NCBI RefSeq assembly: GCF_001194135.2
Contig: NC_068994.1
Location: forward strand, 53,616,853 to 53,680,852
Direction of reading: 5' to 3'
Length of the DNA: 64,000 bases
Origin: Octopus bimaculoides
Lineage: Eukaryota
The notes below the pieces were generated by a model. That model was not told where the DNA came from and did no database searches. It saw only the letters and a program-made list of their open reading frames with translations. Made by a program: the position numbers and the translations under genes. Below, one piece after another: positions 8,106-64,000 of the stretch. Position 1 is the stretch's first letter. Each line of letters begins with the position of its first letter.

Positions 8106-11100
8106 ATGCCAACAAGTAGGAAAAATTTATATTTTTTTGTTTATTGTTTATATTTAATTAATGTTTCCTATATTGTTTACATTTAATTAATACCAGTTCA
8201 ACATAGTAATGTTGTTTATTTGGCGGAGGTAAAAAATACGTACACCACCCGTTTTCGGCGTAACAAAAGCACTAACCCTAAACACCGGGTGTACGTATTT
8301 TTTACTTTCGCCGTTTATTTTACGCTTTTGCTTTGTTTTTTAGTGGGGGGTGAACGAGCTGAGAAGGGAGTTTCTATGAATGAATTCGTTCGACCTTCCA
8401 TAAATAGCAACTGAATCTCAAGTATATTTTACCGTTTTAAAAATATGAAGGACTCGCTGGATAATATAATCCTCGATGCACTATGTCTGGAAAAGGAAAG
8501 GATTGTCATGGCTGTAATGCCTTTTCCGATGAACACTTTCTTGCCTAATCTAAAATATTACGGATCAGGACGCCCACATGAGTTGGATTTTTTCCGCTTT
8601 GACGGGGATTTTTCCAATTTATTTTTCACTACACCCTGAGTTTCTTATCGCGAGCCACTTTGAATATTTTCATGGAATAATTTGAGCATAATAAAATCAT
8701 TGAAATTAAACTAAAAGAGCCTAATTTAATGAAATATCAAATAATGCAACCTAACAGAAAGTAATAAGTTAATGTATGAACGATTTCAACGGGTTCTTGA
8801 TTTACAAGGATTTGTGTATCTCCTTGCCCACTGGATTGCATCTCCTTGATTTTCTCGGAGCAGATCCTAAGATCACCCTTTGCCGCTTCTTCAGCCATTC
8901 TGACCACCGTCTGCTGGCGTATTGAGCGTAACTCTGCCAGGAGTGCTATGTCAACAGCATAGTCCAAATCCGTTAGACGTCTGCCTGAAGTCCACTGTAT
9001 TCCGGCAGATGGTTCATTTATGGCTCTCTGCAAGACCGATAACCAGACACGTTGGACAATCGGCGACCCTTCATATTACGGCCATAAGCTTCAAAGTATG
9101 AAGAGAAGCTAGAATGTAACAGAAACACATCGTTAAATGTTCTAAAGAAACAATAATCTTTCAAATCTGTTTATCTACCAATATTCTTTCAAGTATAAAG
9201 ATGTAATTGTATGAAACATTTATCCCCAAATACAACATCTGTTTCAACACACGATTTCACATCAAAAATCTTACAAAACAAATATATAAACGGAACAATC
9301 ATAGTATTGTTTTCGGGTAACTTCTCCAGATTATCCATAGACAAGTGACAAAACAGGAATTTCACCTGCACTTAACTCTCAAATACAGTATCGACGGTAC
9401 TGTGCTAGCCTGAAACTCAGTTTTGCAACACCCGTCCCTCAGTTCTATGTTAGTAGATCAAAACACAATTACACATTTTATTCTCAGAACATTTCATATA
9501 TAATATATATATTTATTTATAAAGCATTACTGTTTGTTTCTTCAGAAAATTTTTATGGCTTTATTTTTATCCCCCCGTTTTCTGATGTGGAACTTAATTA
9601 CAACTCACTCACTCTCTCGGCAGACCTTAAGACGAATCGAACTCAGGAGATTTTCGATTGTACATATTTGTTCTATGAGATTTCTATTATTGAATACACC
9701 CGTTTTTTGTTGTAGCTCGATTAATGTAAACGCTTAAATAGTCTTTTATATCATGCCTTCGTATTAAATTAATAGTTAGTCATATTGTTCTGCAAGTGTA
9801 GTGGTGCGTGTGGCCGCCATCTTAGGAAGTGCCATTGTGCATGTGCAAGGGATTTGCCGTCAGCGGAAGTACCCGAGCACGCATGCGCAATGCAACAGGT
9901 GGAGAAAAACCAATAGCGTTCGCGCTCTTTTCTCTCTAGCAGCGGTGGCGACAACACGTATCTCTTATCCATCCAGCAGCCGTCGTGACAGGACGTCTTC
10001 CAGGCTCTGTCCCAACTCGACCCCGACATGTGGTCGAAGCTTTCTTTGGTATTCTAGCGGCATGCCTATTCACCCAGGAACTAAACGGCTCTACACCAAC
10101 CTAGAATAAACTATGTTCTGTTGTTACCGTTATAACTGGTGACCCCCGACGTGATAACGGAATNNNNNNNNNNNNNNNNNNNNNNNNNNNNNNNNNNNNN
10201 NNNNNNNNNNNNNNNNNNNNNNNNNNNNNNNNNNNNNNNNNNNNNNNNNNNNNNNNNNNNNNNNNNNNNNNNNNNNNNNNNNNNNNNNNNNNNNNNNNNN
10301 NNNNNNNNNNNNNNNNNNNNNNNNNNNNNNNNNNNNNNNNNNNNNNNNNNNNNNNNNNNNNNNNNNNNNNNNNNNNNNNNNNNNNNNNNNNNNNNNNNNN
10401 NNNNNNNNNNNNNNNNNNNNNNNNNNNNNNNNNNNNNNNNNNNNNNNNNNNNNNNNNNNNNNNNNNNNNNNNNNNNNNNNNNNNNNNNNNNNNNNNNNNN
10501 NNNNNNNNNNNNNNNNNNNNNNNNNNNNNNNNNNNNNNNNNNNNNNNNNNNNNNNNNNNNNNNNNNNNNNNNNNNNNNNNNNNNNNNNNNNNNNNNNNNN
10601 NNNNNNNNNNNNNNNNNNNNNNNNNNNTATTGTCTTAAAGGAAAACACACAAAGAAAAAAAATTATTTTTATTCTTAGTTTAAACTCTGCAAATACTGAC
10701 TTTGCTTTTCAGCCCTATAAGTTTGATAGGACAAGTTTCACTGATGCGTTTTAGGTGAGGTTGGAGGTGGCTTGTGTAGTTACTTACACAGTTATCCATA
10801 CAATTTTGTGTTTATTTCTGCCATCCTAATTTTAACTTTAAATTCTTTTTTTCTACCTGATCAGATAACATTTCGGTCGCAGAGCCTGATGTGACTTCTT
10901 CCAACCATTATTCTGTACATCTTGATTGGTCTTCCTCTCTGCTCCAGTTCAAATACAACATTCTAAATGAAACTGAGAGAATCTACACCATTACACAGCA
11001 ATCTGAAGGTCATGTTGAACAAGAAGATGGCTGGAAAGATGTATATATGTATGTACACTAACATGTACTGTTTTATCTAGTTGGATAGTTAACTCTAGAA

Positions 11101-14100
11101 TTTAAAGAATATTTCATTTATATGAAAATAGTTATTGCTGCTGTTTAATCTAGTTTAGCCTTGATCCAGGAGACATATAATCAAAGACATTCCAACTGTG
11201 ACATTCCTGTTTTTTTATTCTGACAGTGTATTTACATTAATATTATTTAATGTAGTTTTCTTTGTCAGACCTGATTCAGTAACCTTATTATTAAAGACAT
11301 TCTAGTTTGAATAATCTGTTTCATTTAATGTGATTTTCCATTTTTTTTACAGATGATAGGGTGTGAGCTGAAATAAATTTGGCTGCTATTTCAGGCAGAT
11401 TAAGCAGCTACATAAATGATTCTATATTCCTTCTCTCCATTGATGAAATTGCATTACTTATTTCTTATTTCTTTATTGCCCACAAGGGGCTAAACATAGA
11501 GGGGACAGACAAGGGTATTAAGTAGATTACATCGACACCAGTGCGTAACTGGTACTTAATTTATCGACCCTGAAAGGATGAAAGGCAAAGTCGACCTCGG
11601 CGGAATTTGACCTCGGAACGTAACAGCAGAGGAAATATTGCTAAACATTTCGCCCGGCGTGATAACATTTCTGCCAGCTCACCGTCTTAAATTGCATTAC
11701 TGCTGACTTTAATCAAGTAGTATTGTTCAGTCAAGGTCAGCTGCACGTTAAACATTACTGCAAACAATATAATCTATCCAGTGTAACTTTTATTGCTTTT
11801 TGCTGATGTGGTATAAATTAGATACAGTGGCTCTGAGGTTAAGGTGCTTGACAACTGATTGCATAGCCACATGTCCAAATCTTATTCCTTATAGATGCTG
11901 ATCATTTACTTTCATCAACTGAATGATTTTCTGATAACAATCTTCACAGCAAAACTAAGTACATGCACTCTGATATACAGTATGGTATAATATATGATTA
12001 AGCTTCGTATGTATCAGTATATTTTTTAGGAGTTTGTGCCTAAATTAAAGAGAATATGGTATTTTATACCAAGCCTGAAGACAGTTTTTACAAAGAGACA
12101 AATTTACTAGAAGCTAGTTCTTTATCACCAAATTTTCTCCACAACAAGACTTGATATATTTATATACCTATAATAAACATCTGCTGTAACCATGTCATAT
12201 TTCCTGGAGTTTTGCATCCAGAACTTGGACATCCGGTATATTCATCTATTTTTAAGACAGTAGGATAAAACTTGGAGCAAATCTAAGAGCTGTTGCATGT
12301 ACAGAATATATCATGTAATGTACTAGTAATAATATTTAAAATCATAAAAGAAAATACAAACTTTATTTTAATTCACATTATAGGGCTTACTGTAAGCCAA
12401 ACTTTATTGTAGAGTGGATATAGTTAATGTTAGTAAATCACTGTTACTTTCCTTAGTTGACACTGTGTGAAGATGGAAGGCAAGTTTGACAACTGCAACA
12501 TATGAAGTCAGAGCTTAGATTAAATACTGTTAAATCTTATATCTAGGACCCTACTATTTCTGCTTACTCATTGTTCCATCATCCTCTTGTGGTATTGTTA
12601 CAATTACTCAATGCACTACACTGGTGTGTGTGTGTGTGAGAGAGATGACAATCAAATCAAATAATAGACAAACTATATTATCTATTATTTTTTTGCAGGG
12701 GATATGGTGAACATACAGTTGTGATGGACCTTAATCCAAGCACTGAGTACATGTTTCGACTTCGATTTCATCGAAGTGATGATGATTACACTTACTGGTC
12801 ACCTCCAGTAAAAGCCATTACATGCAGTAAGTAGACATCTCAAATTATTTTATTATTTTTACTCTTTTATTGGTTCTAGTGAGTTAGAAGTCTCCATGCT
12901 GGGCTTTTTCTCATGATTTTTTCTTTTCATATTTAATATTTACAAATTTTCTGTGAATGTTAAATTTTTGAAATATTGGGTTGATATTTTGCCTATGGTT
13001 AACATTTATGGTTTACTTAACCTGAATGAGCTCTTAATCTTCATCACTCTGAGAGATGGAGCTAATGTTCGATGGGGAATGCATCGTCAACATGACAAGC
13101 TCTTTGATTCTGAAGGTCTTTATGGATTGTCGTATTGAGTAAGTGAATTTTAATATTTGTGTGTGCATAAATGTATATATTTGCTTTCTCTTTAACAATA
13201 TTTCACTTCTTTGTGTATGTGAGTGGTTACAGATTAGGATGTTTGAACATTTATCACCACCACAACCATTCTCCTCTTCATCATCATCATTCTAGTCATT
13301 GCTAACCCCTACTTCTTCCTTGCCCCTTTGTCCTCCCTTTAACTATCATCAAGGTCATCATTTTTGCCATCATCATTAATTTTTAAGTCTGTTTTACCAG
13401 TCTGGCATCGATTGGACAACTTTACAATTCATCAACTGACTGTGCATCTTGGCTCTACTTCATCTCTTCTGTGAGATATCCCATGTTCTCAATCAAAAGT
13501 TTTGACTGGCTTCTTCCCAAGTCCTCCTTGTATCTCAGGTAATTCCTGTTTCTACTCTGAGGACACATTTGGAGGTGTTTTAGTTACTTATTCTCTCTCA
13601 GCTAGATGTTCTTCTTATTGATAAGCACTCAACCATAAACTAAGAATTGAAACTGTGGTTGTCAGTCAGACAGGCTAAGGTATATATTCACTTGCTTTGC
13701 CCAGAAGCATCCTTATTCTCACATCTGAGTTAGTTCATGGTTGTTGTTATTGTCTATGTCCATCCCCACCTAATGAAACTGTTCAAGTAGAACAAAGATA
13801 AAAGCCATTCCAACTATGACCTCTTGTTTTTAATTTCTGTTACTATCAGTTATTTTTCTAATAAGCCTGCTGGCTATTTACAACATCAGTGCCTGAAAAG
13901 ACGCAGAAATTCGACAGATCATTGACAGTGAGATTTGGCTGTTTGGTAGCTACTGGACTTCTGCCACTGATGAGCCTAGGCAGGACAAAATCACGTGGTC
14001 TGGAAATTCCAGTACCCATAGCAGACAATCCCATCTGCCAACAATATAAATATGAGTGCTTTTATGCACCATGCATCCATATAAGAGGTTCTCTCAAGGT

Positions 14101-34710: not shown

Positions 34711-34751
34711 ATCAGAACTATTCTTCTTTCAAGTTGACTGCAGTGAGGTAG

Positions 34752-34863: not shown

Positions 34864-35492
34864 AAGGATTTGAAGGTAGGTGGAGCTGTGGGCCCATTGC
34901 AGAAAGTCATGAAGAGTTGCTTCAAATGTCTGGCATAGAAGAATTTGGTTCAGTCAATCAATCAACCAAGTAATACAAAGTTGCCAAGTTATTGCAAAAT
35001 TGATTAGGAATTGGATTAGAATAGAAGAGGTGTATGTTCCAAATTCAAATCCAGACAAAGTAGACTTTGAACTTCATCTTTCCCAAGAACAATAAATTGA
35101 TACAAGTGAAGCACTGTATCTATTACAAAATGCTTGCTCTTGTGCATCTGTTTAAAAATCATTATCATTAGTTCAGTTTCTGTAGGAGTTCACTCATCCT
35201 TCAACCCTCAAGGGCTGATAAGGTAAATTTCAAGGATGAACTCTAGGAAGTGAGATGATTCTATTTTCTTTCCCTTGAAATCTGCAGTTGTCATGTATAT
35301 CTATGATTATAATTATTCATTGTGTCCTTTATATCAAGTAGTGGAATGTGGGTAGAAGTTTTAACTTCTATTTCTAGTAAACTGAATGACTTTATTTGGG
35401 CTCCTTCAGCTTGACAAATTTGTTTTTTTTTTTTCTGCCAGTGTAAAAAATTCTAGTTAACATTTTATATATTTTTTTTTTTCTTAGAAAAT

Positions 35493-38400
35493 ATGGAAAT
35501 CTTAGCGGCTGAAGTAACTTCTTCAGACCATTATTCTGTACATCTTAACTGGTCTTCCTCTCTGCTTCAATTCAAATATAAGCTTTTATGTGAAACAGAG
35601 AGAATCTATACTGTGGTACAGAAAATCGAGGGTAGTATTGCAGAGGAGGACAAGTGGCAGATTGCATATATGTGAGTACCTCTACTTGTTATGATTTCAC
35701 TAGTAGGATAGATAACTTTCAAAAATAAAGGAAAATTTCATTTGTCTGAAAATCAAAATTGATGTCATTGGGATTTTTTTAATAGTCTAGTCAGGAGGCT
35801 ATACCCTTTGCACATCCTCCAAGACTGGTGAGAGTGATGTGGTTGATGTTCATCTTGAACAACTACATGAAAATATGGGTGGGATCAAATTTTCTGAAGT
35901 TTGACACCCCAATATCCAATCTGTCAAGGGATTGGTCATTGTAGTTACTGTGGGGCCTGGTAGGGAAAACACAATATGGGTGTCAAGAGGAGGAGAGACA
36001 GGTATGTCAAGTGAACATTGGTGGATGTGATATGCAACTAGCTCCTCTCCAAGAAGAAACTGTTATATAAAGGTAGAGAAGAATTTCAACCAACTCATCA
36101 TTCCAACATCCTCAGTTATGACACAGCTGAATTATTAAGACTACTTATGTGTGACAGAGAAAGAGAGAGACTCACATACAATACCCATTGTAATAGCCAA
36201 ACTATACTGGCTTGTTACTTTTATTACAGAGGATATGGTGAACATACAGTTGTGATGAATCTTAATCCAAGTCAAGAGTACCTGTTTAGAATTCGATTTC
36301 ATCGAAGTGATGATAATTACTCTGCCTGGTCACCTTCAACAAAAGCCATCACAGAAAGTGAATAAACATCTTAAATTACTTTTATTTTACACATTTTCAT
36401 TTCTCTTATATTTTTACTGGTTCCAATCAGCTGAGTGTTGCCATGCTGAGGCTCTGATTCATTATTGTAATTTTTTTATTCTTTTATTTTTTACATTTAT
36501 GAATTTTTAACAATTTAGTTTTAGTATGGTATGGTATGTATGTATGTCTCTGTAAAGTATGTAAATTTGTATACCTGAATGGTTAGCATTGTTATCTTTG
36601 AAATCATCATCACTACTACAGTAATCCTACTTATCATCATAATCATCACCATTATTTTCCAATTCATCACTTCCATCTTCCTCCCTTTGCCTTTCCTTCC
36701 ACATCATTATGATCATTAAGCTCATTATCTTTGCTCTGATCATTAATTTAAGTTTCTTTTACCTTTTTAGCATGTATTCTGCTGGTTTACAATACATCAG
36801 CCTGCCATGCATCTTGGCTCTTCCTTATCTCTTCTGTAAGAGGTTCCATGTTCTCAGTCAGCAACCTGAGCTGCTTCTTCTCAAGTCTTCTTTGTACCTC
36901 AACTGTCTCCTGTTTCTGCTTTGAGGACATATCTGAAGACATTTTAGGGACACATGCGAGCTGGCAGAAACATTAACACACTGGGCAAAATGCTTCACGG
37001 TATTTTGTCTGTCTTTACATTAAGTTCAAATTCCACCAAGGTCAACTTTGCCTTTCATCCTTTTGGGGTTGATGCTATGTTTATATCTTTTTTAAAATAT
37101 AGTAGAAAGATCCTATACAACCACTCAACTTGCTAGATACAGCAACTAAATTTCACTCAAATCGCATAGTACCATCTAATTAAAAGAAAGGACACATTAG
37201 ATACTGTATCCCTTGACACCCCTAAAAAAACAAGATAGTCTGGTCACTACTGGAATGCCTTTGGTAAAAAGTCACTTCAAACCACAACTATAAAATTCTT
37301 CTTTTTGCTTTATTTTTTTTATTTGAGTGCATGTGCGTTTGTTTATGAAGGGTTAATAAATGGATTGTTTCCAGTACAAGACTCAAGGAACAGTCTCTTA
37401 AAATTCTAGTGATAATATTTATTTAATCAAGTAATTAAATAAAGAAAGGACTAACTTGTTAAATTCAGTTCCGTTTCTTTTTTCTACAGAAGAACCATAC
37501 TATGGTGAGAACTTACATGACGCTGTGAGCCAACAGAAATTTCAAGAAATTCATGATGTGTTACAATCTGGGTGAAATACCATGTTTTTTCATTTATTTT
37601 TTTACACCAACCACTTTACAGTGTGGACTGGGTGCTTTTAAGTAGCACCTGCACTGACAGGGTCACCAAGTACTTGCAAGACAAAAAAAAACTTTCAAGA
37701 GGGGAGGAGGCATTGGAGGAGGTGGTCTTATGTTCGATGATGAAAAGGTTATAGTGAAATAGACACAGGTGTCTTGCTGTAGAGGAAGTACAATGTTACC
37801 CGGCCAGAGAGAGGAAGATCAGGAATGAAGACAGAAACAGGTGTACTACCGCAAAGGAAATACATGGTTTCCCAACCTGAAGGAAGTGGAAGACATCAGG
37901 ATACAGATGGTGGCAAAATGTTGGGCATACTCACAAGGAACAGTGATCAGAATATATATGGGATGGTTGAGTAAAGGAAGAGAGAGATATACGATGGTGG
38001 CAAGTGCCAGGGCATACCCTTGAGATTCAAATGCCATAATATAAGTGGCAGGATATTGCAATGGTAGTGTGATTAAAGAGTGTGAGTAAGTGGCGAAAGA
38101 CCTAGAGATGTATAGAGTTAGTGGGGCTACTAGTAGCAATGACACAGAATAACAGGGTTGTGAGAACAGGATTGGGGAGTGAGAACTAGGCATAGTGTAT
38201 GAAGGAGTTAGGTGTGGGTGGAACACACAGGTTGGGAGCTAGTAGATAGCAATAATAGAGTGAGATGGAGCATGTGAGTAGAACACAGATCAGAGGCAGG
38301 CAGAGAGCAGTAGGCACAGGGCAAAGAGGACAAGATTGGGGAGTGGGAGGTAATCAAAGTACATGAAGTGGAAATGTGAGAAAGAGAAGAGATGTAGTTT

Positions 38401-38592: not shown

Positions 38593-38625
<33 letters not shown>

Positions 38626-48923: not shown

Positions 48924-49310
48924 AATTGTGATAACAAGCTGGAAGTGGATTTGGAGTGGCCTTTCCATATTTTTCTTTATTTCTGTGTCTTTATACCTTA
49001 CAATTCAATGTGCACATGGATGGACAGAATCATCTTTTGCCTGCTTTGTCTCTCTTAAATAATCTACTAGACATTGGTGAGAGTGTTACGTCTCTGTAAT
49101 TAGACCTGTGCTTCTGAAACATATTACTTCAGTGTCACTGAATCTTGCATACTTTTCTATCCTTAAACTCAAAGTTGAACAGAAGTGGACAACTTGACCT
49201 GTAATATAATTCTATCTTGTAAAATTCTTACAAAACCAATTGAAACAATTTTAACATATTTCAATAGTATTGTTGCAAATAAAGTTATTTTTCTTCACTA
49301 ATAAACTACC
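48924..49310 (+). other. Non-coding terminal 3'UTR exon of paralog C; AATAAA at 49278 and 49300
   Basis: Acceptor ctaatttatcAG|aattgt identical to copy A; patchy homology to 6533-6890 up to the poly(A) signal. Confidence 0.65.
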
Positions 49311-51965
49311 ATATTCATCTGGAACTTACTATTATTTCTGTTTTGTCAATGTTTTTCAGATTTCTTTCTCCTTGTCTTCCTTCTTTTTCAATTTTTATTT
49401 CAAATTCTCCTTCTGTGCTTCATTCTTTTAGTGGATGTGAGTGGGATTGGTATAAGACTGTGTTGCACTTACACCTTTTTTACTTCCTTCTCATACATAG
49501 ACACATATACTCTCACTCTCTCTCTCTATTTATCTATCTATCTATCTATCTATCACACACACACACACAATAAAATCATAGCCATCATTTACAAGCAGTA
49601 TGACTTAGGAGCATGTATCATACCTTCATTAATTGTTTTAAGTGCCTATGCAATTATGAGCAACCATAAAAATCTCTCAGCTTTCCCACCCTTGATCTCA
49701 CTGAACATCCAGGATGTGACAGCATGAAGGAGAGAGGGCTGCACCCTAATCTGCTGGTACTCATTTTCAGCAAAGTAAACTGGAGATACTTGAAATGAAG
49801 CACTTTGCTCAAGAACACAATACACAACCAGTTGCAGGTATTGAACTCTCAAATTTGTGATCATGAACCCAGTACCCAAACCAGGTTAGAATACTGGGCT
49901 AAGCAAATAATTTTTCATACTGATGTTTGTGTGTGTATATGTGTGTGTGAAGGTATGTGGTCTAATTATTAGGATGTTTGGCTCACAATCATAGTGTTTT
50001 CATTAATAAACTGTGGCATTCAATTGGGACTTACTACTCAGTTGTCTCTACAAAAGCAAACGAGTTTTTCTGTTTGTCAGTAACTGAGCTTAAACCATCT
50101 CATCTGAAATAAGTATGCAAATCTCTAAATTTCACTTGTATTCTCTGATCAAGAATGCAGTATTGAATCATATAAGGTGTCCCTTTAACATGTTTTAGTC
50201 GTTGTTTTGAATCATCTATGGAAACTGTCACAAAGTTTGTCTCAGTCAGACCTTTAACAAACTCAGATTAGAGTGACTTTTTAGTTATAGCATGGCAACA
50301 TAGCACATTGTGAAAATAACCATTATATCCAACACAACTTGAGTGGCCCTCATTTGGCACTTTACAGCATTGTACTGTACATCATGGTTTTCAAAGAAAA
50401 GTAATAATCTGAAGACAAAGCATGTGGTCCTATTTCTGAATCCAAAATTGGAACTTACAAAGAAGTTAGAGACTAGTGTTTCACTGGCAAGTGTTTCTGA
50501 AGATTATGATCTTAAAAGGTAAATAGTTTCGGGTATACACAATGCTAGAGATAAATTCATTGCATTTTCCTTGGAATATGTTTGCAAATTCAAATTTTTA
50601 AAAAATATAATTGCAAAACTTGGTGCAAATTTTAAATTGTTGTCTGTTGTTATGAGGGCTGCAAAATATACTAATTGGGAAAGCACTGATGTTGTAGTTT
50701 ATCCTTCAAAGATTCTACAGTAACAGCATCTATGGTATAGAAATTTAAAGTGCAGCTTCCAAAGTAGCTAGACATATGGTGGTTTTGGTAAAATAGAAAT
50801 TGCTGTAGAATAGGTATTTGAATACCCATGATGAAGTAGATAATACACTAAGTGAAACAAGCACTCAAGAAGAGGTTAAATATAATGGCTCTTAATTTCC
50901 TAAATTATGTGTAAAATGAGACTAAACATGGGTTGCATTAATGGCAACTATCTTGGAATACTCAAACTTTTAAGAATGAAGCTACTACACCTGATTCCAG
51001 TGTTTTGTAGCACAGAAGCAGACATACATACACTTTTAAAAGTTAGTGCAGATATCAGTATGACTTTGAGTTTTGAAAGAGATAATGCACCAGTTACCAG
51101 TATATTACTGTATTTCCAAAAAATCATGGGAAATCCTTGTTCAGCATGCATATCTTTAATTACTGGGGTTTTTTTTTAATTCATTCTTTGGTGCATAAAA
51201 ACCTGGAAAATTTCTTCAAACATTCTGCTGGTTAAGTGGAGGTCAAACGATGCTGATATCAGAACCTAGTAAGATGATATGGAGAGTAACTTCAGACACC
51301 AAGTATTATCAGAAGAGATACTGAGTGAAGTTCTTAACAGCAGAAATGGTGATCTATTGCTCAAGAAGCCCAAACTCGCTGATATATATATGAGAATCCT
51401 TCAGTCACCCGAGATTTGTATGAGTGTGAGGCAAGGTACTAGTGTAGCATCATAGCTCTAATACAAAATGACAAGTTATACTCCCTACCATCACCTCTAT
51501 CACAAAATACTCATCTGTCGTTTACAATGGGTAACAATACTCTTTGATTTTCATACATTTAATGTTAAATAATTTTATAAAATATATATTTTTAATTTTA
51601 TATATCTGTACGGTATTTACAGTATTTCCTGTAATTTTGTTGCTGTTTCTCATGTTAAAACCACACTGTATATTTCCAATATTGTATATGTACACAATAT
51701 TAACCCATCTTTGGTTAACTCGTACAGTTGCCTTAACTTCACATTCTTCTTTTCACCTTATAACGGGCAGTTCAGTTCATGTAGTGAAGCTGCAATGAGA
51801 CTGTTGCTTTGTTGACATATAGTGACCTCCCTTAGAAACCACAGGACAACCTGAATGACATGTATAAGCTGACAAACAAACAGATACAGAGAGAAAATGA
51901 AAGATTAAAATAGAAGAAAAATGTAATGTGTGAAAGAGATGTGTGTGCATTTACATACGTCTATG

Positions 51966-52193
51966 TCTACGTAACATAACACGTGCATACTTTCTTAGCG
52001 TTTTATTAGGGATTTTCTGAGTAGCTTTTGTCATTAACTGCCAGTAATGTACAAGGTCTAACGACTAAGTTTCCAGCTCTTTACGGGTGGGAAAAAAAAG
52101 ATTTGTGATTGTCATCTTTATCCACTTACTTAATCTCCATAGGAGTTTATATATTCTCTTGGTGGATTTTTCTGTACCCCATAATGTCAGCAA
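51966..52193 (+). promoter_or_regulatory. Conserved upstream block and exon 1 of paralog D
   Basis: ctacgtaacataacacgtgcatactttc...ttaactgccagt; ends tgtaccccataATGtcagcaa|GTAGGT. Confidence 0.6.
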
Positions 52194-55100
52194 GTAGGTC
52201 GAGATTATATTTTTGTTTTGTTGCTTATTTATCTTTAATAAGTAGTTCTCTCAGAAGAGAAAGCCAAATCACTAACGGTTTACGCTGGTAATTTAGTTCA
52301 TTTTACAACGTGGATCTTTTCAGAAAAGATCCTAGAAGATATTTTTTGATTGAACCAATGAAGGAGCTTCTATGGCATCACCAGAAATATCATCTCAATT
52401 TCCAACATATCACCCTCTGAGTCTTAAAAAAAGATGGAGGAAGTACACATTCCGTTATCCTTTTTTCTTTTAATCGAAGCACATTCGTTAACGCGTAATC
52501 TTGCTGAATGCGTTCGTAATTAGAACGTCCTTGACCTCCGGTACTAATCGAAAGTAATCTAACACATTAATCAAAACTGACCCAAAGGAAATAACACGTT
52601 ATAATAATAATAATCCTTTCTACTATAGGCATAAGGCCTGCAATTTTTGGAGAGGGGGCTAGTCATTACATTGATCAGTACTCAACTGGTACTTATTTTA
52701 TTAACTTGGAAAGAATGAACGGCAAAGTCGACCTCGGCAGAATTTGAACTCTGAACGAAGAACGGAAGAAACGTCACTAGGCATTTTACCTGGCACGATA
52801 ACAATTCTGCTTGCTCACAGTCCATCAGGTCATAACAGAGGGGTGCAAAGCGAAAGTTTTAGTAAGTAAGAAAGCAAATTTGTATCCATATAGAAAATGG
52901 CCTTGTTCAATATGAAGAAAAAAGTAAGCAGAAATTCTTTACGCTGTAGTTAATATAATCTGTGGACACAAGAGGTGCAGTGGTATCACAGAGAGATTAA
53001 CAAAGAAAATATACTTTGTATGTGGCAAATGCACAGGAGCAATAGAATTTAAGAGTACAAAGGAAATAGATTTTCTCAAATGCCCAGAAAGATTCCTAGA
53101 CTAGAAGCAGTAACACAAAAAAGTACCCATTACACTTTGTAAACTGGTTGGCATTAGTAAGGGTATCAGCTATAAAAATGATTCCAAAGCAGAACACAAT
53201 CCTCCAAACCATCAGATCTTGTCAAATTTCCAACCAGTGCCAATATGGAAGATGCACATTAAAAGATGTTGATGATGATCTTCAAATCACACCCTGCTGT
53301 CTTTTTTAAAAAAGACTCATTGGATAATGTAGCCTAAGTACACTGTTTGATAAAAGATAGAATGATCAGACTGGAGTGATTCTGATTGTAGGTCTGTTCA
53401 ATCAGAAGCTAAACAGTGATAAACTTATTCTCACTAGTTCTATACTTATCAGATAATTATTTTCTTCCTTTGTAGGGTTTTTTGAAGTGTTTTCGGTGTC
53501 TATATTTCTTGATCCTTCATACACAACTTCTGTGCTAGATGGGATATATAGAAGAGTGTGTATTTCTATGCCCCTTTTCTAAATTCTCCTGGTAGTGCTA
53601 AGCACATTTGTTGGCATCCTTTTGTCTCGAGAGACAATGGTAGTTGTGCATAAAATAATCCAGTCCAGTTTTTACATTTCCTGTCATTTACATCTGCTGT
53701 GGCTGTGTAGTCCTATTCTGGACAAACACTCCCTCTGGCAGGTGACGCAGATGTAGCGAAGACTTTGCCTGGCTGGTTGTATAATGTCATAGTTTCTTGT
53801 TGTTGTCTTTTCTTGTCTTTCCATTTCTCCTGTCCTTTTGTCACTCGTTTGTGTTCCCTCTCCCTCGCCAATCTCCACGGTTGCTGGCAACCGCTTCCCA
53901 GTTGCTAATATTGATGTCACAGGCCTTCATGTCCCTTTTGCAGACATCCTTTTCCCATAAGAACAGTCTTCCAACAGACCTAGTGCCCCTAGCAAGCTCT
54001 CCGTAGAGTATGTCCTTGGGGATTCTGCCATTTTCCATATGACTAACATGTCCAAGCCATCTCATACGTTTTTGTGTGAGGAGTAAAATCATGCTTGGTA
54101 TTCCTGCTTGCTTGAGGAAATCTTTGTTGGGGACATGATCCTGCCATTTGATGCCAAGGATTTTCCGGAGGCAGCACAGGTGAAAGATATTTAGGCGACG
54201 CTCTTGACATGTGTATGGCGTCCAGGTCTCACTGCCATACAGTAGAGTGTTAAGTACACATGCCTGGTAAATCTTCATTCTTGTGGTCTTGGTCAGCTTG
54301 TTGTCCCATGCCCGTTTGGAGAGTTGGGCCATCACAGCAGCTGCTTTGCCAATGCATATATTGAGCTCGGCATCATGGGATAGGTTGTAGGTGACAGTAG
54401 GGCCAAGATAGGTAAACTCCACTTCTTGTAGTCTGTGGTCTCCAATATGTATGTTTGGGATGTCTGATGTAGCCTGACCCATGATGTTGGTCTTCTTGAG
54501 GCTGATAACTAAGCCAGTCTCTACATACTTGCTCAAAGCAGTTGATGAGCCTTTGCAGGGCTTCTTCTGAGTGTGATACCAGAGCAGCATTTACCCTCCA
54601 TAATGTTCAATCCAGCAATGAGATTGCCAAAGTGTGCGGCAGCCAACATAGTCTTCCATTTTTTATTGGTTGACATTACTCCTTTTCAAAGTTGACTTCA
54701 GTTGATCTTTGAGCTTCTCTTTGGTTCTCCAGTCATGTGTTGACCATGGTGTAGTCGATCATAAAGGATTTTTCAAGGGAAGACACGAGCTAGATATAAA
54801 CATTGCATATCTACGAGGGGGTATTCAAAAGTAACGAGAAATGTTTTGTGGGACAAGCCCATTGTAGTTCAGGCTTCAACCACTAGAAGCCACTTGATGT
54901 GACCCTCAGGCATCTGTCTGCCGACCAGTGGCATCATGTGAAGTTGTACTGTCATGTTGTGCTTCCATGAAATTCTGTTTTCTGCTGGGGAAAACAGCAG
55001 CTGAAACAGTTGTCATACTTCAAACAGCTTACAAGGATGTGGCCATGAGCAAAAAACAAGTTTACAAGTGGTTTTCATGCTTTAAGAATGGTTACTTGTT

Positions 55101-58100
55101 GCTTGAAAACCAACCTCGTTCATCTCCTGAATGAATGAAAACATCACGAAAATCCATGACGAACTTGTTGATAAGACTGGTGTGTTCTGTAGCTCCTGCC
55201 AATGAATTTTGAATGAGGAATTGCAAATGCGGATGGATACATGAAAATATTACGTCTTTTATACATGCTTGTCTATATATATGGGAGCAAATATGGGTGC
55301 ATGTAAGAATAAGCATGTATACACAAATGAATGTGTGTGTGTGTGTGTGTGAATGCACAAGCAAATGAGTGCATGAAAAATGTGTATACATGAGGGAATG
55401 TTGGTTCATAACTGGTCTGTATCTTGAATTTGTGTGAACATATATATATGTGTGAGAACATTTAATCCACCCCACCGTACTTCTTGAAAACAGAATGGAT
55501 ACATTAATTAATATAGTCATAGATGTCTGTAAGAAACAGGAAGATTATAGCTAGAATTGTTTTGATAATAGCTCAACTCAATTAGCTTTGATTTAAGATT
55601 AAACATTAACAACACGTCTTCTTTTGCCTTCATTTTCACATTTTTTTCTATAAGTTGGTTTTTCTTTTATACATCACCCAAACGCTTATATCTCTTCAAA
55701 TTACATAATTAAATTTCTATCATCTATCTATCAAGTACAACCTCATCTCTGCCTTTTCTACAGATGATCTACAAAAATATGTACAAAACCGAAATTTTTC
55801 TGAACTTGAGAAACTGGTTACTTCTAGGTAAAGAACAAAGTTTTATTTATTTATTGTTTTCACTTTCATTGTTATTATTTTACTGCATAAAGGAAGTGTA
55901 TAGGATGGTTAAAGCAGGAATGCCTTTGATGATAGGGCTTTTTGATTAAAACTCAACAGTGGCTAAAGAATACCAACAGCTCCTGAGAATGAAAAAGTCA
56001 GGTATCTGAGTTGATGGTCAAAGGTGGTCAGGTAAATTTGGAGTAATTCTTGTGCAGCTCAGCTACAAACTCTGCAATTTGAGGTATGATTGTTGTACTG
56101 TCATTGTTCTGTATGGTGGTATCTGGATTACAATAATCTTTTCTGAGTGTATTATTTTGTTCATATAATGGAAGCCTTCTATTGTACATACAATTTATTA
56201 TAGTGGATATAGCTTGTTACAGCTACATTGATTTATCACCTAGTAGAGAATATAAGTAAAATCATTGTTAAATGTTATCCTGCAGTTTTGTTAATAATGA
56301 AATGAATTTATAATTTTCTTACATTAATGGATCTGAGCAGATGAATGGGCAGTTATACCAGTTTATTGACCCAAAAAACATGTCTGTTGATGAAGCAGAT
56401 GCACTAGCTGATTGGTCTAAATTGTGATGCTGTAGCCAGGTCTGTTGATACCAGCCTGTCTCATGATAGATGGTTCTTGACAAAAGCAAACTATCAATTT
56501 GTGGATCAATATTTGAGCTATTATATGGTATAATAACATTCTTGTTGTTATACCATATGTATACTAACAAGAGATATTTGTTATAACCAAACTCCCTACC
56601 TTATTGTCTTTAATATTTGAGACCACATTTTGTTTTTAAGTTCTGAAATTTTATAATTCTTGTAAAATTGACCAAATGCTTTGTTTAGAATGCATGAGAA
56701 GTGGGCAGAAATTTATTACTTTTCCTTTTAACATTATGAACCTTGAATTAAATACCAGCCTTTAAGAATCATCCTAAGGGGCTATTGGGAAAATATATTT
56801 CTATGAACCAAGTTAAAAATCATTGATTCTTTGTAAATGAATGATAAGGATTATGAGGATGTTGAACAGTGATGGTGATGAAGGTGCATTCAAAAAGCAT
56901 CTAACTATTTTCCTGTCAAAACACAGACAAAATCTTTTGGGTGGAAGCTGTTACCACCCTTCCTGAGCATGCATGAAAATTTCACACCAGTAAGCTGTGT
57001 CAGTTCCTGGCTGTTGTGCCTAGAGTACAGACATGTAATGTACATTTGTCAGATTTTTGTTTTCACACAGGATGACCAAATGCATTGAGCAGAGATATTG
57101 CATCACGTTTTGCCAAAGGCTTGGTGATATTCAAACTCAAAGCATCCAGAAGATTCAGCAGGCCTTTGGCAATGATGCTATGAGCAAAACGAAGATCAAG
57201 GAGTAATACAACTGCTTCAAACATGGCCACACCTAAGTTGAGAGTGATGTATGCTCAGGCAGGTCATCCATGAGATGAAATGAGGAGCTGATTGAGAAGA
57301 TTTGGCAAATAGTCATGGAAGACCATTGTGTAACAATCAAGTTGGTCACAAAGTAGGAATAGGCACAGGATCAGTGCATTCCATTTTAATGGAGGATCAG
57401 TGCATGTGGAGAGTATTGGCAAAATTTGTCCCCAAAGTGCTAGCAGAGCAGCAGAAGCAACTCCACATAGAAATCGTTCAGGACATGCTGGACTGTGCAA
57501 ACCATGACTCAGACTTCATGAAGACCATCATCACTGGTGATGAGACATGTGTTTATGATTTCTGTTCAATGCATTTGGTCAACTTGTATGAATACAAAAA
57601 ATCCAATGAGTGCACACTGCATATCTGTACTCTAGGCATAAAAGCTGGGAACTGATACAACCTATGGGTGTGAAAATTTTCCCACATGCATAGAAAGGGT
57701 GGCATTACTCTTCCACCCAAAGGATTTTGCTGGTGCAGCATTAGTTTTAGCAGGAAAGAAATAAAATTAGATACTTTTTGAACATACCTTGTATAATGAT
57801 CATCATAATGTAGGCAATGATGAATAATGACAACAATAGTGATGATTTAAAAAAGAGCAATGAAATATGATGATAACGATGACCATGATAATAAATAATA
57901 AGAATTATCAATCATGAAGTTGTTGGTTATGTATTATAACAATTTTCCATAATGTGTTACAGAAAGGTCTTAGTTGATATGCCACTTGATCAAGGTCTAA
58001 CTGCATTAATGATTGCAACAAAACGGAATGATATTGAGTAAGTACTCACAATATATATATATACATACACACACAAATATTACCTCTTTTCATGAGACAC

Positions 58101-59913
58101 AAAAAAACCTGTTCACTTTTTAAAGAATTGATTTTAGTTGATGAATACTGTTGCTGGTCATCTTAGAATTTCTTTTCATGGAGAAGAGTGGTGGATGACA
58201 ATAGGTAGAGCAACAAATTAAATACCTGGATGGCCAGATAAAATACTTCATGGCATTCCTCCAACTTTACATTCTGATTTCAAGTGCCACTGAGGTTGAC
58301 TTTACCTTTCTTCCTCTTGCAGTCAATAAATTAAGTACCAGCTGAGCACTGGGTTTAATGTAATTGACTAGCCCCCCTCCCCTCAAGTTGCTGGCTTTGT
58401 GCAAAAAATTAAAAAGAATTATTTATTTATGTCTTTTTGTATTGTGTTGAAATCCTATTGTAGAAGTCTTTATCATTCATCTGTCCAAGGTAAATATAAT
58501 TTATGGATTTGTGCCTCTATTAGAAATTAATATTTAGTCAGAGTAAAGCAGTGCCCATAACCCTTGCTAGTCCTCCTTGACTGTGATCTAGAATGTTTGT
58601 GTGCAATAAATGTAGTCCTAAATATATTTGTGAGCAGTACTATAACGTAGAGAATAGCTGAATTTTGTAGAAACTTAGAATCATAAAGACTGTCCCACTA
58701 GCCCTGGTACTTAGCAGGTACATATTTTATCCACCCTGGAATACTTGAAAAATGGAATAGTCTTGCAAGCTTGAACAGAGAGTATAAAAGAATTTCTCTA
58801 AATGTAGTACGTATTATTTAATCAGCTTCATGTACTGAGTTTGCAATTCACTGTCCTTTGGTATTTGTTTTATGTTGCTACAGCAACTATACATATCGTG
58901 AAATATTTCCCTACATATTTCAGGATTATGGAATTACTGTTGTCCTTGAAAGCATCTGTCACTGCTAAAGATGAGTCAGGAAAAACAGCGTGAGTATTTA
59001 AAATCTAGTTTTATTTATTCAACAATAACAAGGGAAGAAGGACAATGATTGGATGACTGCATTTTGTGTCTTGACTTATTAATGGCTAGCTATTTTCTTT
59101 CACTAGATTTTCTCATCTCTGTGGTAAAATGCTAAATCAGAATAAGGCAATATTATTTTCCAAAGGTGCAAGGTAGAATAACATAAAGCATTTGTTTTCC
59201 ATGACTCTGTGTGTATGTGTTTTCATATCTCATATATATATATATTTAAGTACTATAACAGAAACTAAAACTTGACTAAAATTTTGTACACAAAATTAAA
59301 CTTGAATTAAAATTTCAAATTAAATAAAATTCAAGTGATTCTATCACTGAGAAAAATCATTTTAAAACTGAAATTAAAATTCAAACTTAGGCTAAAATTT
59401 ATTGTGTTTTAAAAAAATACAAATGGAAATTTGAATTTCAAATTGAAATAAAAAAAAAGTTTTCAATTTAAAATTTGAATCTTTTTTCCACTCCATCTTA
59501 CCCTCTCAGTACAGTTTTTTTTAATATTTCAGCTTTATTAATTTAAAATTATAAATAAAAAATGATAAAAATTTATATGCTAAAAAATTTTTTTTCCTAT
59601 TTTTTGTGGGGCTGCTACCTCAGTTTAATGCATGCTTGCATCTGTGGCAATCTGCAAGCTGCAAAGATCCTACATAAAAATGGTGCACCTTTTGAAGATT
59701 TTGATTTTGGTGGATCTAGTCCACTACATCATGCTGTTGACAGTGGCAGCTGCGAGATCATATCATGGATGATAAGGGTTGGAGCAGATGCGGACATTCG
59801 AGACAAAAATGCTGCTTGGACTCCACTGATGCGATGTGGTAAGTTTTAAGTGTAGTTTGATTCTTTTTATTCTTTTAAAAGTAATTGTAAAGCATGTGGG
59901 GATAGGTTGTTCA

Positions 59914-59949
<36 letters not shown>

Positions 59950-62878
59950 CATGAATGTGTGTGCAAGTGTTCTAACCTCACTGAAGATTTAAAGTTCTTA
60001 CTGAAACATTCCACTAGCGTTCCTTATTTTTCAAGAGTGAATATGTTCTATATCTATTGGACCACAAGTATTTTTGGCCAGGGTAATTTTTCCAACCAAG
60101 AAAGGACTTACAGCACATCAGTAGCACCATTCCAAATTTAGGAGTTGTACTCCATTGTGAATCTTGTGCTTTGCAGAGAGTCAGCAGCTTATCAGAACAA
60201 GTATTTTCTGGAACTGAAGAGCAAGTCTTGACTTTAAAATGCAGTTGTAACTATGTTATGTGTGTATGGTTGTCAAGAAAGATCATCAGAGGTTTTGAGG
60301 CTTTGTATTTGTAGCAACTTTAAGGATTTTAATTGCCTGTTGTACAAGACTTGAAAGGGTGACGTACAAAATTGTATGCTAGAGATGTGCAGTGATTGTG
60401 TTTTAGTGTTGTTGAAAGAGACAAGATTTTTATATCCCTATTGAAATATTTGCACCCATCAACGTCTTTGAGTAGGAAAACTGAATATATTAACTGAGTT
60501 TCTATTAAGGAATTCATATGTATGGATTGACATGATGTATTCAGTGTTTTGTGTTTTCTTTTTCTTTTTTCCTCAGCTTCTCTTTCTGGTAACAAATCAG
60601 TTGCTAAGACATTGATCTTCAATGGAGCTAATATTGATCTCAAAGACAATGATGGAAAAACCTGTTTAATAATTGCAGTCATGAATGATCATGAACAATT
60701 AGTAGAATTTCTCTTGGAGAACAACGTCAACATCAAAATATTAAATACGGTTAGCAGATTACTGTCTCCTTGATTATTCATTGTAGATCATCATCACTGA
60801 CATTGTTGATCAATTTTACTAGTCAGACAAAAGTGAACCAAGAATTTTTATGTGCATTGTTTTAGGTTTAGCAAGGGAAAGTGATGTGCCTGTGGACCTG
60901 GTAATATTATAATCTGGTTTCAAACGAGTCGTGATTAAGAGCGCCAAGAAATACAAAGACAGGTTAAAATTGACAGCCAAACTGGTACAATATGAATAAT
61001 ACTGTTAGTAAAAATACATTGGTTCCTCGTGCAGTTTGTACATGATGATGTGCGCAGGAAAAGAACAAAGTATGTTAAAGTCTTCTGCTGACAATTCTCT
61101 CTCCTCTGTGGATAGCTTAGAGGAAATTATTTATAGTGGTAGGTTGACTCAAAACACACAATGCTTTTCTGGTCCGGCAAGTAGTCTGATTGGATAACTT
61201 AAAGCATCCAATCGGCACAAATGGGTTTGGTCATGTGACCACTTGCATAAAACAAGTGTAGAAACTGTTATGAGCCTATTTAAGCTTAAGCAAACCAAAT
61301 TGTGAATATATACTTGCTACAAAGGGTAAACAAAACGGCTGTTGAAATTTTCAATTAAACTTGTGATCACCAGGATCAGCCCATACTGTTATGATAATAA
61401 TAGTGATGATGATTTCCAAGATAGGTACAAGGAGAGTAATAATTTCATTCAACTTCCTTATATGGCAAATACTTTTCTTTCCTTTTTTTTTTAATGAATA
61501 AAAATAATAAAATCAATCCTGGCAAGAATTGAACTTGAAAAGAACATAGCTAAATACTACAAGCCATTTTGTCAGGTGTTCTGCCACTCACTGTCTCACA
61601 AATAATTGATGCTGGTTCAAGCCAGTAAAAAAATAAGTTATTATTAATAGTTTTGTAAAATAGTGTTGTGTTATGAACTGAGTTTATTAGTTTTGATGCC
61701 TTCATAGATTTAGTCATGCTAAAAAAAAGTACCAGTCAAGTATTGGAGTCAATATAATTGATTGTGCCTTCATTCCTGAAATGTGTGGCCTTATGCTTAT
61801 GTTAGAAATTGTTATTGTGATTCAAGACAGGAGAGGGTATGAGGGAAGAAATGAATCAACTGGCTTTCTTGAATAAACATTTCTCAGTATTTAGTTTTGT
61901 CTCTCAATGTTCCAGTTCTAGACCTCATGGCATTAACTTTCCCAATGATCCTTTGGGTCTTAAAATATATACTAAAATTAAACTGGAACCTTGTGGCTCT
62001 GTGTTCAATAAAATAAATATATTGGAGTTGATCCAGTTGATACATTCTCCTATCCCCTACCATAAATAGCTGTGTTACTTAGAAATTAATATCAATGTAT
62101 GAACAACCATTTACACTTGCTTCATTTTTTTTCTCTTTCTCTCTCTATCCTTTACAGAGTGGTCGAACAGCATATGAAATAGCAGTTTCCCTTAAAAAAA
62201 CCGTGAGTAGATTTATTGTTCAAGTTAACTTTTGAAAGCTGTATGGTTTATCAGTTTCCTCTTCCTCCTTATTCTTCTTCACTATTTCTTTCTTTCTTCT
62301 GGTTTTAGGTCAGCCCTGATTCAGTATCTCTATAGCTCAGCGAATTTTGAGAGAATAACTGTGTGATCCGTAGATGGAAAATGTTTTGGATGTGTTAACT
62401 GTTTTCATCATTTAACTTGCATTCCAACCATGATTATACCATCTTTTTCTCGGGCACAATATGAACAAATAAAAAACAAAACAGTATCCATTAATATAAC
62501 CTTCTTTCTAAAGTTAGAAATGACTAGAATATTCATCTGTGACCACAATATCCATTACTCAATGTATCTAGGATTCTATTATCCTATTATTCATTTTTAA
62601 GATTTGAATTGATCCCTAATTTCAGCCATTCCATAGATTTTGTTGTTTAACCATAGTCAGCCTGAAACAGCAGATCCATGGTGAAAAGTATTTTGGTTAT
62701 AAACCATCCTTTTTTTTTGTCTGTTGTAGACTACTACTAGTTTCCTCTAATCCTGGTTTTTATTATAGGTTGGTTATAAGTTTGTTTTTTTGTTGAAGCC
62801 ATTTTTCTTTTCATTTGTCAGGCAATAATAAAGATCTTGGATAAATATATGAAAAGTAGAAAGAATAACATTCCTTAG
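52184..62878 (+). CDS. FANK1: FANK1-like paralog D lacking the FN3 domain, 234 aa; join(52184-52193,55764-55827,57963-58037,58924-58989,59624-59838,60577-60749,62158-62202,62822-62878)
   Basis: 705 nt open frame MSANDLQKYVQNRNFSELEKLVTSRKVLVDMPLDQGLTALMIAT...MKSRKNNIP*. Ankyrin exons match B/C in size (75,66,215,173,45,57); exon 4 is 18 nt shorter; no FN3 exon homolog seen between 52194 and 55763. Confidence 0.85.
53680..54590 (-). mobile_element. RTE-BovB-like LINE, 3' part of ORF2
   Basis: GLVISLKKT, FTYLG, TLLYGSETW, MRWLGHV, RIPKDILYGEL and terminal CVTCQRECLSRIGLHSHSR zinc finger. Confidence 0.85.
54810..55190 (+). mobile_element. Mariner 5' fragment
   Basis: TACGAGGG TIR start; MKFCFLLGKTAAET...QVYKWFSCFKNG...ENQPRS. 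Confidence 0.75.
56878..57560 (+). mobile_element. Decayed mariner transposase, N-terminal half
   Basis: EQRYCI.FC...; AKFVPKVL; FMKTIITGDET.VY (first catalytic D motif). Confidence 0.8.
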
Positions 62879-63680: not shown

Positions 63681-63771
63681 GAAAAAATTCCCCCTGGATA
63701 GCTCCCTACTGATTCAAACTCATGGTCAACAAGCTTGAGTTAGTAGGGAGGAATGAGTAAGCATGCATAAA

Positions 63772-64000
63772 AAATTTACATGGCCCAACTAATTAGGGAG
63801 CGAATCAATTTAGATGAGATGCAGTTTGGGTTCGTGCCAGGTAAAAGCACTACTGATGCCTTATTTCTAGTGAGACAGTTGCAGGAGAAATACCTAGCTA
63901 AGGATAAACCTCTGTACCTGGCTTTCGTTGACATGGAGAAAGCCTTTGACAGGGTCCCCCGATCCCTTATCTGGTGGTCAATGAGGAAACTTGGGATAGA
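63772..64000 (+). mobile_element. RTE RT fragment, open frame, continues past the window end
   Basis: EMQFGFVPGKSTTDALFLVRQLQEKYLAKDKPLYLAFVDMEKAFDRVPR. Confidence 0.9.

What the first reader, a model, noticed from the sequence alone, without database searches (positions are those of the whole stretch)
52184..55827. Paralog D is an FN3-less, ankyrin-only FANK1 made by clean loss of a phase-1/phase-1 exon module
Seen: D keeps the upstream block and the 10-nt exon 1 (ATG TCA GCA A|gtaggt). No homolog of FN3 exons 2-3 is visible in the following intron, which holds SINE, RTE, BovB-like and mariner pieces. Exon 4 is exactly 18 nt shorter, removing the EPxYGE linker that joins FN3 to the ankyrins, and the frame stays open to the stop. 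Inference: selection kept a truncated protein, possibly a dominant-negative or decoy competitor of the FN3-containing siblings, or a relocalised scaffold.
Basis: partly seen in the sequence, partly recalled or inferred. Interest (0 to 1): 0.8.

Follow-up and report, generated by a model that had tools for sequence, protein, structure and literature searches.

The report
Octopus FANK1 paralog without FN3 domain
One of four neighbouring FANK1 gene copies in Octopus bimaculoides has lost the two exons that encode its fibronectin-type domain and now encodes only ankyrin repeats; the gene is intact, is shared with two other octopus species and is already in the public annotation, so it is an ordinary case of domain loss after gene duplication.

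Summary
The window is Octopus bimaculoides chromosome CM046614.1 and carries four tandem FANK1-like genes. B and C have coding exons of 10, 184, 128, 82, 75, 66, 215, 173, 45 and 57 nt. D has 10, 64, 75, 66, 215, 173, 45 and 57 nt. D therefore lacks exons 2-3 (312 nt, phase 1 at both ends, the FN3 domain) and the first 18 nt of exon 4. All D splice sites are GT-AG and the 234-codon frame is open.

Profile, tBLASTn and nhmmer searches find no FN3 remnant in D intron 1, which has no assembly gap. The independently assembled O. vulgaris ortholog has the same structure.

The public annotation already calls a 234-residue product starting at window 52184. The shorter models in all three Octopus species also lack FN3.

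Evidence for selection is mixed:
- **Indels:** none between species, against 5.4 expected (P about 0.005).
- **Long-term omega:** 0.42 on the D branch, as for B and C.
- **Recent omega:** about 1.0 for O. bimaculoides versus O. vulgaris, but the FN3-containing paralog B also shows about 1.0.

The decoy or dominant-negative idea is untested. This is a conserved domain-loss paralog of modest interest.

The parts
51932..52045 (+). Upstream block shared with paralogs B (7836-7972) and C; contains CACGTGCAT and ...TTAACTGCCAG
   Evidence: blastn, (E 7e-4 and 9e-3); three-way alignment
52184..52193 (+). D exon 1, coding part (ATG TCA GCA A, ends in phase 1), donor gtaggt
   Evidence: The 64 nt around it (52163-52226) are 100% identical in O. 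vulgaris. The annotated CDS start maps exactly here.
52194..55763 (+). D intron 1 (3570 nt). It stands where B and C have intron 1, exon 2, intron 2, exon 3 and intron 3. No FN3 remnant and no assembly gap.
   Evidence: Only its first 75 nt or so are homologous to intron 1 of B and C.
52609..52822 (+). SINE-like dispersed repeat inside intron 1
   Evidence: Other copies at 11526-11686, 15556-15743, 20159-20246 and 37023-37063. ARAGORN finds no tRNA.
53662..54609 (-). Fragment absent from the O. vulgaris ortholog. It holds a 249-aa ORF (53841-54590) that looks like a non-LTR retrotransposon ORF2 tail; class not verified.
   Evidence: Collinearity gap; ORF; no Pfam hit
54928..55134 (+). Mariner/Mos1-type transposase fragment (HTH_48)
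   Evidence: Pfam PF17906, E 7.7e-11
55764..55827 (+). D exon 4 (64 nt, phase 1 to phase 2), 18 nt shorter than in B and C. Encodes (N)DLQKYVQNRNFSELEKLVTS(R), the first ankyrin helices.
   Evidence: Same length and splice sites in O. vulgaris, with 9 substitutions of which 8 are non-synonymous.
57963..58037 (+). D exon 5 (75 nt)
   Evidence: Holds Met31, the start of XP_014769365.1.
58924..58989 (+). D exon 6 (66 nt)
59624..59838 (+). D exon 7 (215 nt)
60577..60749 (+). D exon 8 (173 nt)
62158..62202 (+). D exon 9 (45 nt)
62822..62878 (+). D last coding exon (54 nt plus TAG). The TAG replaces the AAG of O. vulgaris/O. sinensis and removes 10 C-terminal residues.
10865..12826 (+). Reference: B exons 2 (10865-11048) and 3 (12699-12826), the FN3 module absent from D
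   Evidence: The N-terminus of B matches the FN3 structure 1WFU (E 6.5e-4).
35488..36357 (+). Reference: C exons 2 (35488-35671) and 3 (36230-36357), the FN3 module absent from D
   Evidence: The C model is exactly XP_014769356.1.

Best explanation
D is a real, intron-containing, tandemly duplicated FANK1 paralog. A genomic deletion removed exons 2-3, the whole FN3 domain (312 nt, phase 1 at both ends). An in-frame loss of 18 nt at the 5' end of exon 4 removed the flexible FN3-ankyrin linker and the first turn of the first ankyrin helix.

The start exon, its upstream block and exons 4-10 remain. Splicing exon 1 to exon 4 gives a 234-residue protein made almost entirely of six ankyrin repeats.

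The loss predates the split of O. bimaculoides from O. vulgaris/O. sinensis. Since then the reading frame and all splice sites have been kept.

Shown here: the gene structure, the absence of FN3 remnants, the conservation across species, and agreement with the annotated 234-residue product.

Inferred: the protein is made and acts as an ankyrin-only adaptor. It would keep whatever partners the ankyrin face binds and lack whatever FN3 does. In mouse, the FN3 domain is the part reported to select a DNA motif (PMC3901870). Whether D competes with its FN3-containing siblings is unknown.
For: - **Exon arithmetic:** lengths and canonical splice sites.
- **No hidden FN3:** searches that score B and C at 70-103 bits find nothing in D intron 1, and there are no assembly gaps.
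- **O. vulgaris ortholog (L001):** identical exon lengths, splice sites and open frame. The exon-1 block is 64/64 identical, against 5.4% background divergence (P 0.03).
- **Indels:** 0 in the coding sequence against 5.4 expected (P 0.005).
- **Long-term constraint:** paralog-level omega is 0.40-0.45 and the D branch is 0.42, equal to B (0.46) and C (0.37). About 114 substitutions on the D branch produced no stop (P 0.007 if neutral throughout).
- **Domains:** Pfam finds ankyrin repeats only.
- **Annotation:** the public annotation calls a 234-residue product whose CDS starts at 52184. FN3-less models also exist in O. bimaculoides, O. sinensis and O. vulgaris.
- **Linker:** in an AlphaFold model of B, residues 107-111 have pLDDT below 50, between the last FN3 strand and helix 112-122. 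The deleted KEPFYGE is therefore linker plus helix start.
Against: - The recent omega (O. bimaculoides versus O. vulgaris) is 1.04 over all exons and 0.84-0.97 over the ankyrin exons, which is indistinguishable from neutrality.
- Exon 4 has 9 substitutions in 64 nt, 8 of them non-synonymous. This is faster than the flanking intron (P 0.007).
- D carries 22 fixed changes at sites that are invariant in all FN3-containing paralogs, against 5-6 for A, B and C.
- O. bimaculoides D has a nonsense change that trims 10 C-terminal residues.
- The exact 234-residue sequence is not in the protein collection.
- No transcript or protein data could be examined.
- The D-branch omega covers time before the FN3 loss, and the loss cannot be dated within that branch.
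Confidence: 0.65

Rival explanations
1. D is a decaying duplicate. It was crippled by loss of FN3, is possibly still transcribed, and is drifting neutrally. Its open frame is a leftover that has not yet been hit.
For: - Omega is about 1 between O. bimaculoides and O. vulgaris.
- Coding divergence (4.7%) is about the same as intron divergence (5.4%).
- Exon 4 is accelerated.
- There is a C-terminal nonsense change in O. bimaculoides.
- D has 22 changes at otherwise invariant sites.
Against: - No indels against 5.4 expected (P 0.005).
- All 14 splice sites and the ATG are kept in both lineages.
- B, which has FN3, shows the same omega of about 1, so this is a property of the cluster and not of D.
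- The D-branch omega of 0.42 equals that of its siblings.
- It is annotated as a protein-coding gene in three species.
Confidence: 0.25
2. The D ankyrin exons receive an FN3 domain from upstream by read-through splicing: C exons 1-3 (ending in phase 1) joined to D exon 4 (starting in phase 1). Under this reading, D on its own is not the functional unit.
For: The phases are compatible. C and D are adjacent and on the same strand in O. bimaculoides. Consecutive accession numbers suggest they are also adjacent in O. vulgaris and close in O. sinensis.
Against: C and D are annotated as separate genes in three species. No chimeric protein was found among the homologs. D keeps its own perfectly conserved start exon and upstream block. 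In O. sinensis, more than 9 kb downstream of C shows no D sequence.
Confidence: 0.04
3. This is an assembly or annotation artefact: the FN3 exons exist but are hidden in a gap or a collapsed region.
For: The window has N gaps elsewhere, at 10164-10627 and 39034-39978.
Against: There is no N in the D locus. The independently assembled O. vulgaris chromosome shows the same exon 1, intron and exon 4 layout without gaps.
Confidence: 0.01

Closest known systems
[quoted passage not shown]
   Same: The ankyrin-repeat region and C-terminal tail are homologous. The sibling genes B and C have the full FN3 + ankyrin architecture, and the N-terminus of B matches the FN3 structure 1WFU.
   Different: D has no FN3 domain and no FN3-ankyrin linker. 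It belongs to an octopus tandem cluster, whereas the literature searched describes a single vertebrate gene (PMC6486812). The mouse work places the reported DNA-motif binding in the FnIII fragment (PMC3901870), which D lacks.
Sibling paralogs B (XP_014769341.1, 344 aa) and C (XP_014769356.1, 339 aa) in the same window
   Same: Identical lengths and phases for exons 1 and 5-10, the same upstream block, and 56-57% amino-acid identity over the shared region.
   Different: D lacks exons 2-3 and 18 nt of exon 4. It carries 22 fixed replacements at sites invariant in A, B, C and E.
Existing public models of D: a 234-residue product at CM046614.1, XP_014769365.1 (204 aa), O. sinensis XP_036364634.1/XP_036364635.1 (204 aa) and O. 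vulgaris CAI9732681.1 (237 aa)
   Same: Same locus and same ankyrin exons. The 234-residue product starts at window 52184 and has the length of the exon 1 - exon 4 model.
   Different: The 204-aa and 237-aa models start inside or just before exon 5 and omit exons 1 and 4. None is described in the literature searched.
Truncated paralogs that lack one functional domain and antagonise full-length relatives, for example Id proteins among HLH factors (recalled from general knowledge, not tested)
   Same: The logic only: the interaction domain is kept and the effector or DNA-binding domain is lost.
   Different: No interaction, competition or expression data exist for D. It is not known whether FANK1 proteins act through shared partners or as multimers.

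Membership tests
FANK1 family (domain architecture) | N-terminal fibronectin type III domain | tested here: not met
   Exons 2-3 are absent. There is no remnant in intron 1 in O. bimaculoides or O. vulgaris. Pfam finds only ankyrin families in D.
FANK1 family (domain architecture) | C-terminal block of ankyrin repeats | tested here: met
   Ank_2 E 1.4e-49, and Ank with 5 stretches. The homologous region in the model of B has pLDDT above 90.
FANK1 family (descent) | Homology and shared exon-intron structure with bona fide FANK1 genes | tested here: met
   Exons 1 and 5-10 have the same lengths and phases as in B and C. D is 53-62% identical to A, B, C and E. The best database hits are all Octopus FANK1-like proteins.
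Duplicated (unprocessed) pseudogene | Disabling lesions: frameshifts, premature stops or lost splice sites | tested here: not met
   The frame is open, all sites are GT-AG, and this holds in two species. The only lesion is a stop 10 codons before the ancestral end.
Duplicated (unprocessed) pseudogene | Neutral substitution pattern (omega about 1) | tested here: inconclusive
   Omega is 1.04 between species but 0.42 on the long D branch. Sibling B also gives 1.03.
Processed retrocopy | No introns, poly(A) tail, dispersed location | tested here: not met
   Seven introns at the ancestral positions, in tandem with C.
Dominant-negative or decoy paralog | Co-expression with, and competition against, full-length relatives for a shared partner | not testable with these tools
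   No expression or interaction data are available. No paper mentions both FANK1 and octopus.

The most novel reading that the evidence does not exclude
D is a selectively maintained, ankyrin-only antagonist or re-targeted adaptor within a fast-evolving, possibly reproductive, octopus FANK1 cluster. On this reading its new N-terminus (exon 4: 8 non-synonymous to 1 synonymous change, 2.6 times the intron rate) and the 22 replacements at otherwise invariant ankyrin sites reflect adaptive remodelling after FN3 loss.
Probability: 0.15. Interest if true: 0.45.

Novelty: new member of a known kind. Interest (0 to 1): 0.25.

Why it matters
If D is functional, it gives a natural separation-of-function allele for a poorly understood protein family. 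FANK1 is linked to testis and multiciliated cells, and its knockout and knockdown phenotypes in mouse conflict (PMC6486812, PMC3901870, PMC5936064). Comparing D with B and C could show what the FN3 domain contributes. Otherwise it is a routine example of exon-deletion domain loss after tandem duplication. It is already captured by genome annotation, and its main use is for curating the octopus FANK1 cluster.

Tried and rejected
- **Representative-library HMMER search:** a search with the O. sinensis D ortholog was swamped by giant multi-ankyrin proteins. It gave no information on D orthologs in other cephalopods.
- **Exact look-ups of the spliced D proteins:** neither the 234-aa sequence nor the O. 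vulgaris-derived 244-aa sequence is in the protein collection. The look-up of encoding contigs, the representative search and structure prediction refuse spliced sequences, so the D N-terminus could not be modelled.
- **Look-up of P0001:** not on record, because it is not the longest isoform.
- **Deletion junction:** only about 75 nt after exon 1 are still alignable with intron 1 of B and C. The rest has turned over, so the junction cannot be recovered.
- **Acceptor shift versus an 18-nt deletion in exon 4:** C and D share the motif [GA]TAATTAAAT exactly 59 nt upstream of the same ...ttctacag acceptor (read). This favours an ancestral acceptor plus an in-frame deletion flanked by AG, but the evidence is weak.
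- **Pfam on the 249-aa intronic ORF:** no hit. There are no other copies in the loci held, so the RTE/BovB label is unverified.
- **O. sinensis C locus plus 10 kb downstream:** it does not reach D, so no third nucleotide sequence for exons 1 and 4 was obtained.
- **Literature:** the Jab1-interaction paper (PMC11114715) is not held, so which FANK1 domain binds Jab1 could not be checked.
Full report
**Source and layout**

The window is identical to Octopus bimaculoides GCA_001194135.2, record CM046614.1. Locus L005 matches window 25493-57471 base for base.

A tBLASTn probe and self-BLAST show four FANK1-like genes in tandem on the + strand:
- A: only the 3' part is in the window.
- B: coding sequence 8106-27509.
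- C: 33672-47471.
- D: 52184-62878.

My models of B and C are exactly XP_014769341.1 (344 aa) and XP_014769356.1 (339 aa).

**Check of the observation**

B and C have coding exons of 10, 184, 128, 82, 75, 66, 215, 173, 45 and 57 nt. D has 10, 64, 75, 66, 215, 173, 45 and 57 nt. Every junction is GT-AG and the D frame is open for 234 codons.

Exon 1 of D (ATGTCAGCAA|gtaggt, 52184-52193) aligns with exon 1 of B and C. It is preceded by a shared upstream block.

These exons encode the FN3 domain. Residues 13-109 of B match the FN3 structure 1WFU (E 6.5e-4) and gp130 FN3 modules. Pfam's fn3 model does not reach threshold on B.

Exon 4 of D (55764-55827) is 64 nt against 82 nt and lacks (K)EP[FY]YGE. 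In an AlphaFold model of B, residues 107-111 have pLDDT below 50 and the first ankyrin helix starts at residue 112. The missing piece is therefore linker plus the first helical turn. The FN3 part of that model is of low confidence because the alignment was shallow.

**Search for hidden FN3 exons**

A protein HMM of the FN3-plus-exon-4 region from six paralogs or orthologs scores exons 2, 3 and 4 of B and C at 103/98, 72/76 and 36/36 bits. It gives only negative scores anywhere in 49300-56000 and in the orthologous 7.1 kb of O. vulgaris. nhmmer with the exon DNA gives E of about 1 or worse, and tBLASTn gives E above 5.

D intron 1 has no N run in either assembly. Only its first 75 nt or so still align with intron 1 of B and C.

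The rest of the intron contains:
- a SINE-like dispersed repeat;
- a segment at 53662-54609 that is absent from O. vulgaris and holds a LINE-like ORF without a Pfam match;
- a mariner HTH_48 fragment.

**Other species and the public annotation**

The closest database proteins to D are all FN3-less:
- O. sinensis XP_036364634.1/XP_036364635.1 (204 aa);
- O. vulgaris CAI9732681.1 (237 aa);
- O. bimaculoides XP_014769365.1 (204 aa, starting at Met31 in exon 5).

The O. vulgaris locus (L001) is collinear with the D region at about 90-93% identity. It has the same eight exons with identical lengths, splice sites and open frame.

The 64 nt around exon 1 are identical in the two species.

The gene table for the O. 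bimaculoides record lists, downstream of C, a gene whose coding range starts at window 52184 and whose longest product has 234 residues. That is exactly the exon 1 - exon 4 model. A three-codon start exon cannot be placed by protein homology alone, so I infer that transcript evidence underlies that model. I could not check this.

No paper in the library mentions both FANK1 and octopus.

**Selection**

Nei-Gojobori estimates between O. bimaculoides and O. vulgaris or O. sinensis:

| Gene | Region | dN | dS | omega | Non-syn : syn |
|---|---|---|---|---|---|
| D | all exons | 0.049 | 0.047 | 1.04 | 26 : 7 |
| D | ankyrin exons | – | – | 0.84-0.97 | 18 : 6 (ex5-10), 17 : 5 (ex5-9) |
| D | exons 1+4 | – | – | 2.4 | 8 : 1 |
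| B | exons 1-9 | – | – | 1.03 | 44 : 12 |
| C | all (from the exon-2 ATG) | – | – | 0.56 | 22 : 10 |

D and C do not differ significantly (Fisher P 0.41).

Among the paralogs omega is 0.40-0.45. Three-point branch estimates give D 0.153/0.364 = 0.42, B 0.46 and C 0.37.

The recent values for B and D are higher than 0.42 (binomial P 0.003 and 0.018). This points to relaxed or diversifying evolution of the cluster as a whole, not of D specifically.

Independent of substitutions, D introns carry 66 indel events in 8614 aligned bases. That predicts 5.4 indels in the 702-nt coding sequence, and none is seen (P 0.005).

Exon 4 has 9 differences in 64 nt against a 5.4% background (P 0.007).

D has 22 fixed replacements at sites invariant in A, B, C and E, against 5-6 for A, B and C. 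Part of this excess reflects D's longer branch (dS 0.36 against 0.20-0.24).

Skipping exon 4 would give a stop three codons into exon 5, so exon 4 is needed for the exon-1 ATG to be used. The Met31 used by the 204-aa O. bimaculoides model is Ile in O. vulgaris.

**Interpretation**

The structural claim is secure. D is a conserved, annotated, FN3-less ankyrin-only FANK1 paralog, produced by genomic loss of a symmetric exon pair plus an in-frame 18-nt loss at the start of exon 4.

Maintenance of the reading frame is supported. Amino-acid-level constraint in the recent past is weak, but no weaker than in FN3-containing B.

What the protein does is not addressed by any data here. Mouse work places the reported DNA-motif selection in the FnIII fragment (PMC3901870), so D would lack that activity if it is conserved. 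The decoy or dominant-negative idea remains a hypothesis.

Domain loss by exon deletion after tandem duplication is a familiar process, and the gene model is already public. Novelty and interest are therefore modest.

Noticed in passing
window 33672-33681 (C exon 1) and 35493 (C exon 2): Paralog C has ATT in place of the exon-1 ATG, in both O. bimaculoides and O. sinensis. Its annotated protein (XP_014769356.1) starts at an ATG in exon 2.
   Followed up: partly
window 28912-30757, between B and C: There is a synteny break. In O. vulgaris, A-B lie at about 49.7 Mb and D at about 30.4 Mb of OX597827.1, some 19 Mb apart. Accession order suggests that C sits next to D there, and that O. sinensis is arranged likewise. 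In O. bimaculoides A-B-C-D are contiguous.
   Followed up: partly
B (8106-27509) compared with L002: The FN3-containing paralog B evolves with omega of about 1.0 between O. bimaculoides and O. vulgaris, against 0.4-0.45 among the paralogs. The cluster as a whole is evolving fast recently.
   Followed up: partly
window 62876-62878: O. bimaculoides D ends at TAG where O. vulgaris/O. sinensis have AAG, followed there by 9 more codons (…KEETRNVSVT).
   Followed up: yes
window 55764-55827: D exon 4 has diverged faster than its flanking intron (9 of 64 nt, 8 non-synonymous, P 0.007). The intron immediately around it is about 95% identical.
   Followed up: partly
window 10164-10627 and 39034-39978: Assembly gaps (N runs) in B intron 1 and C intron 4. 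The second one explains the low G+C in the composition profile.
   Followed up: yes
window 56881-57096 and 57558-57790 (D intron 4): A pair of inverted repeats about 73% identical and about 460 nt apart, probably two copies of a dispersed element.
   Followed up: no
window 63771-63998: Reverse-transcriptase (RVT_1) fragment of a non-LTR retrotransposon downstream of D.
   Followed up: partly
window 51980-52045, 7887-7972 and about 33540-33610: A promoter-proximal block is conserved among B, C and D despite dS of about 0.5. It includes CGTGCAT (CACGTGCAT in D), AGCGT[CT]TT[GA]TT and GT..T[CT]AACT, and may be a shared regulatory element.
   Followed up: no
L001 4714-6374 and several D introns in O. 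vulgaris: O. vulgaris D introns are much longer than in O. bimaculoides (for example intron 5: 5180 nt against 738 nt), because of lineage-specific insertions.
   Followed up: no
window 7004-7196: A 75-nt tandem repeat (2.6 copies) upstream of B.
   Followed up: no
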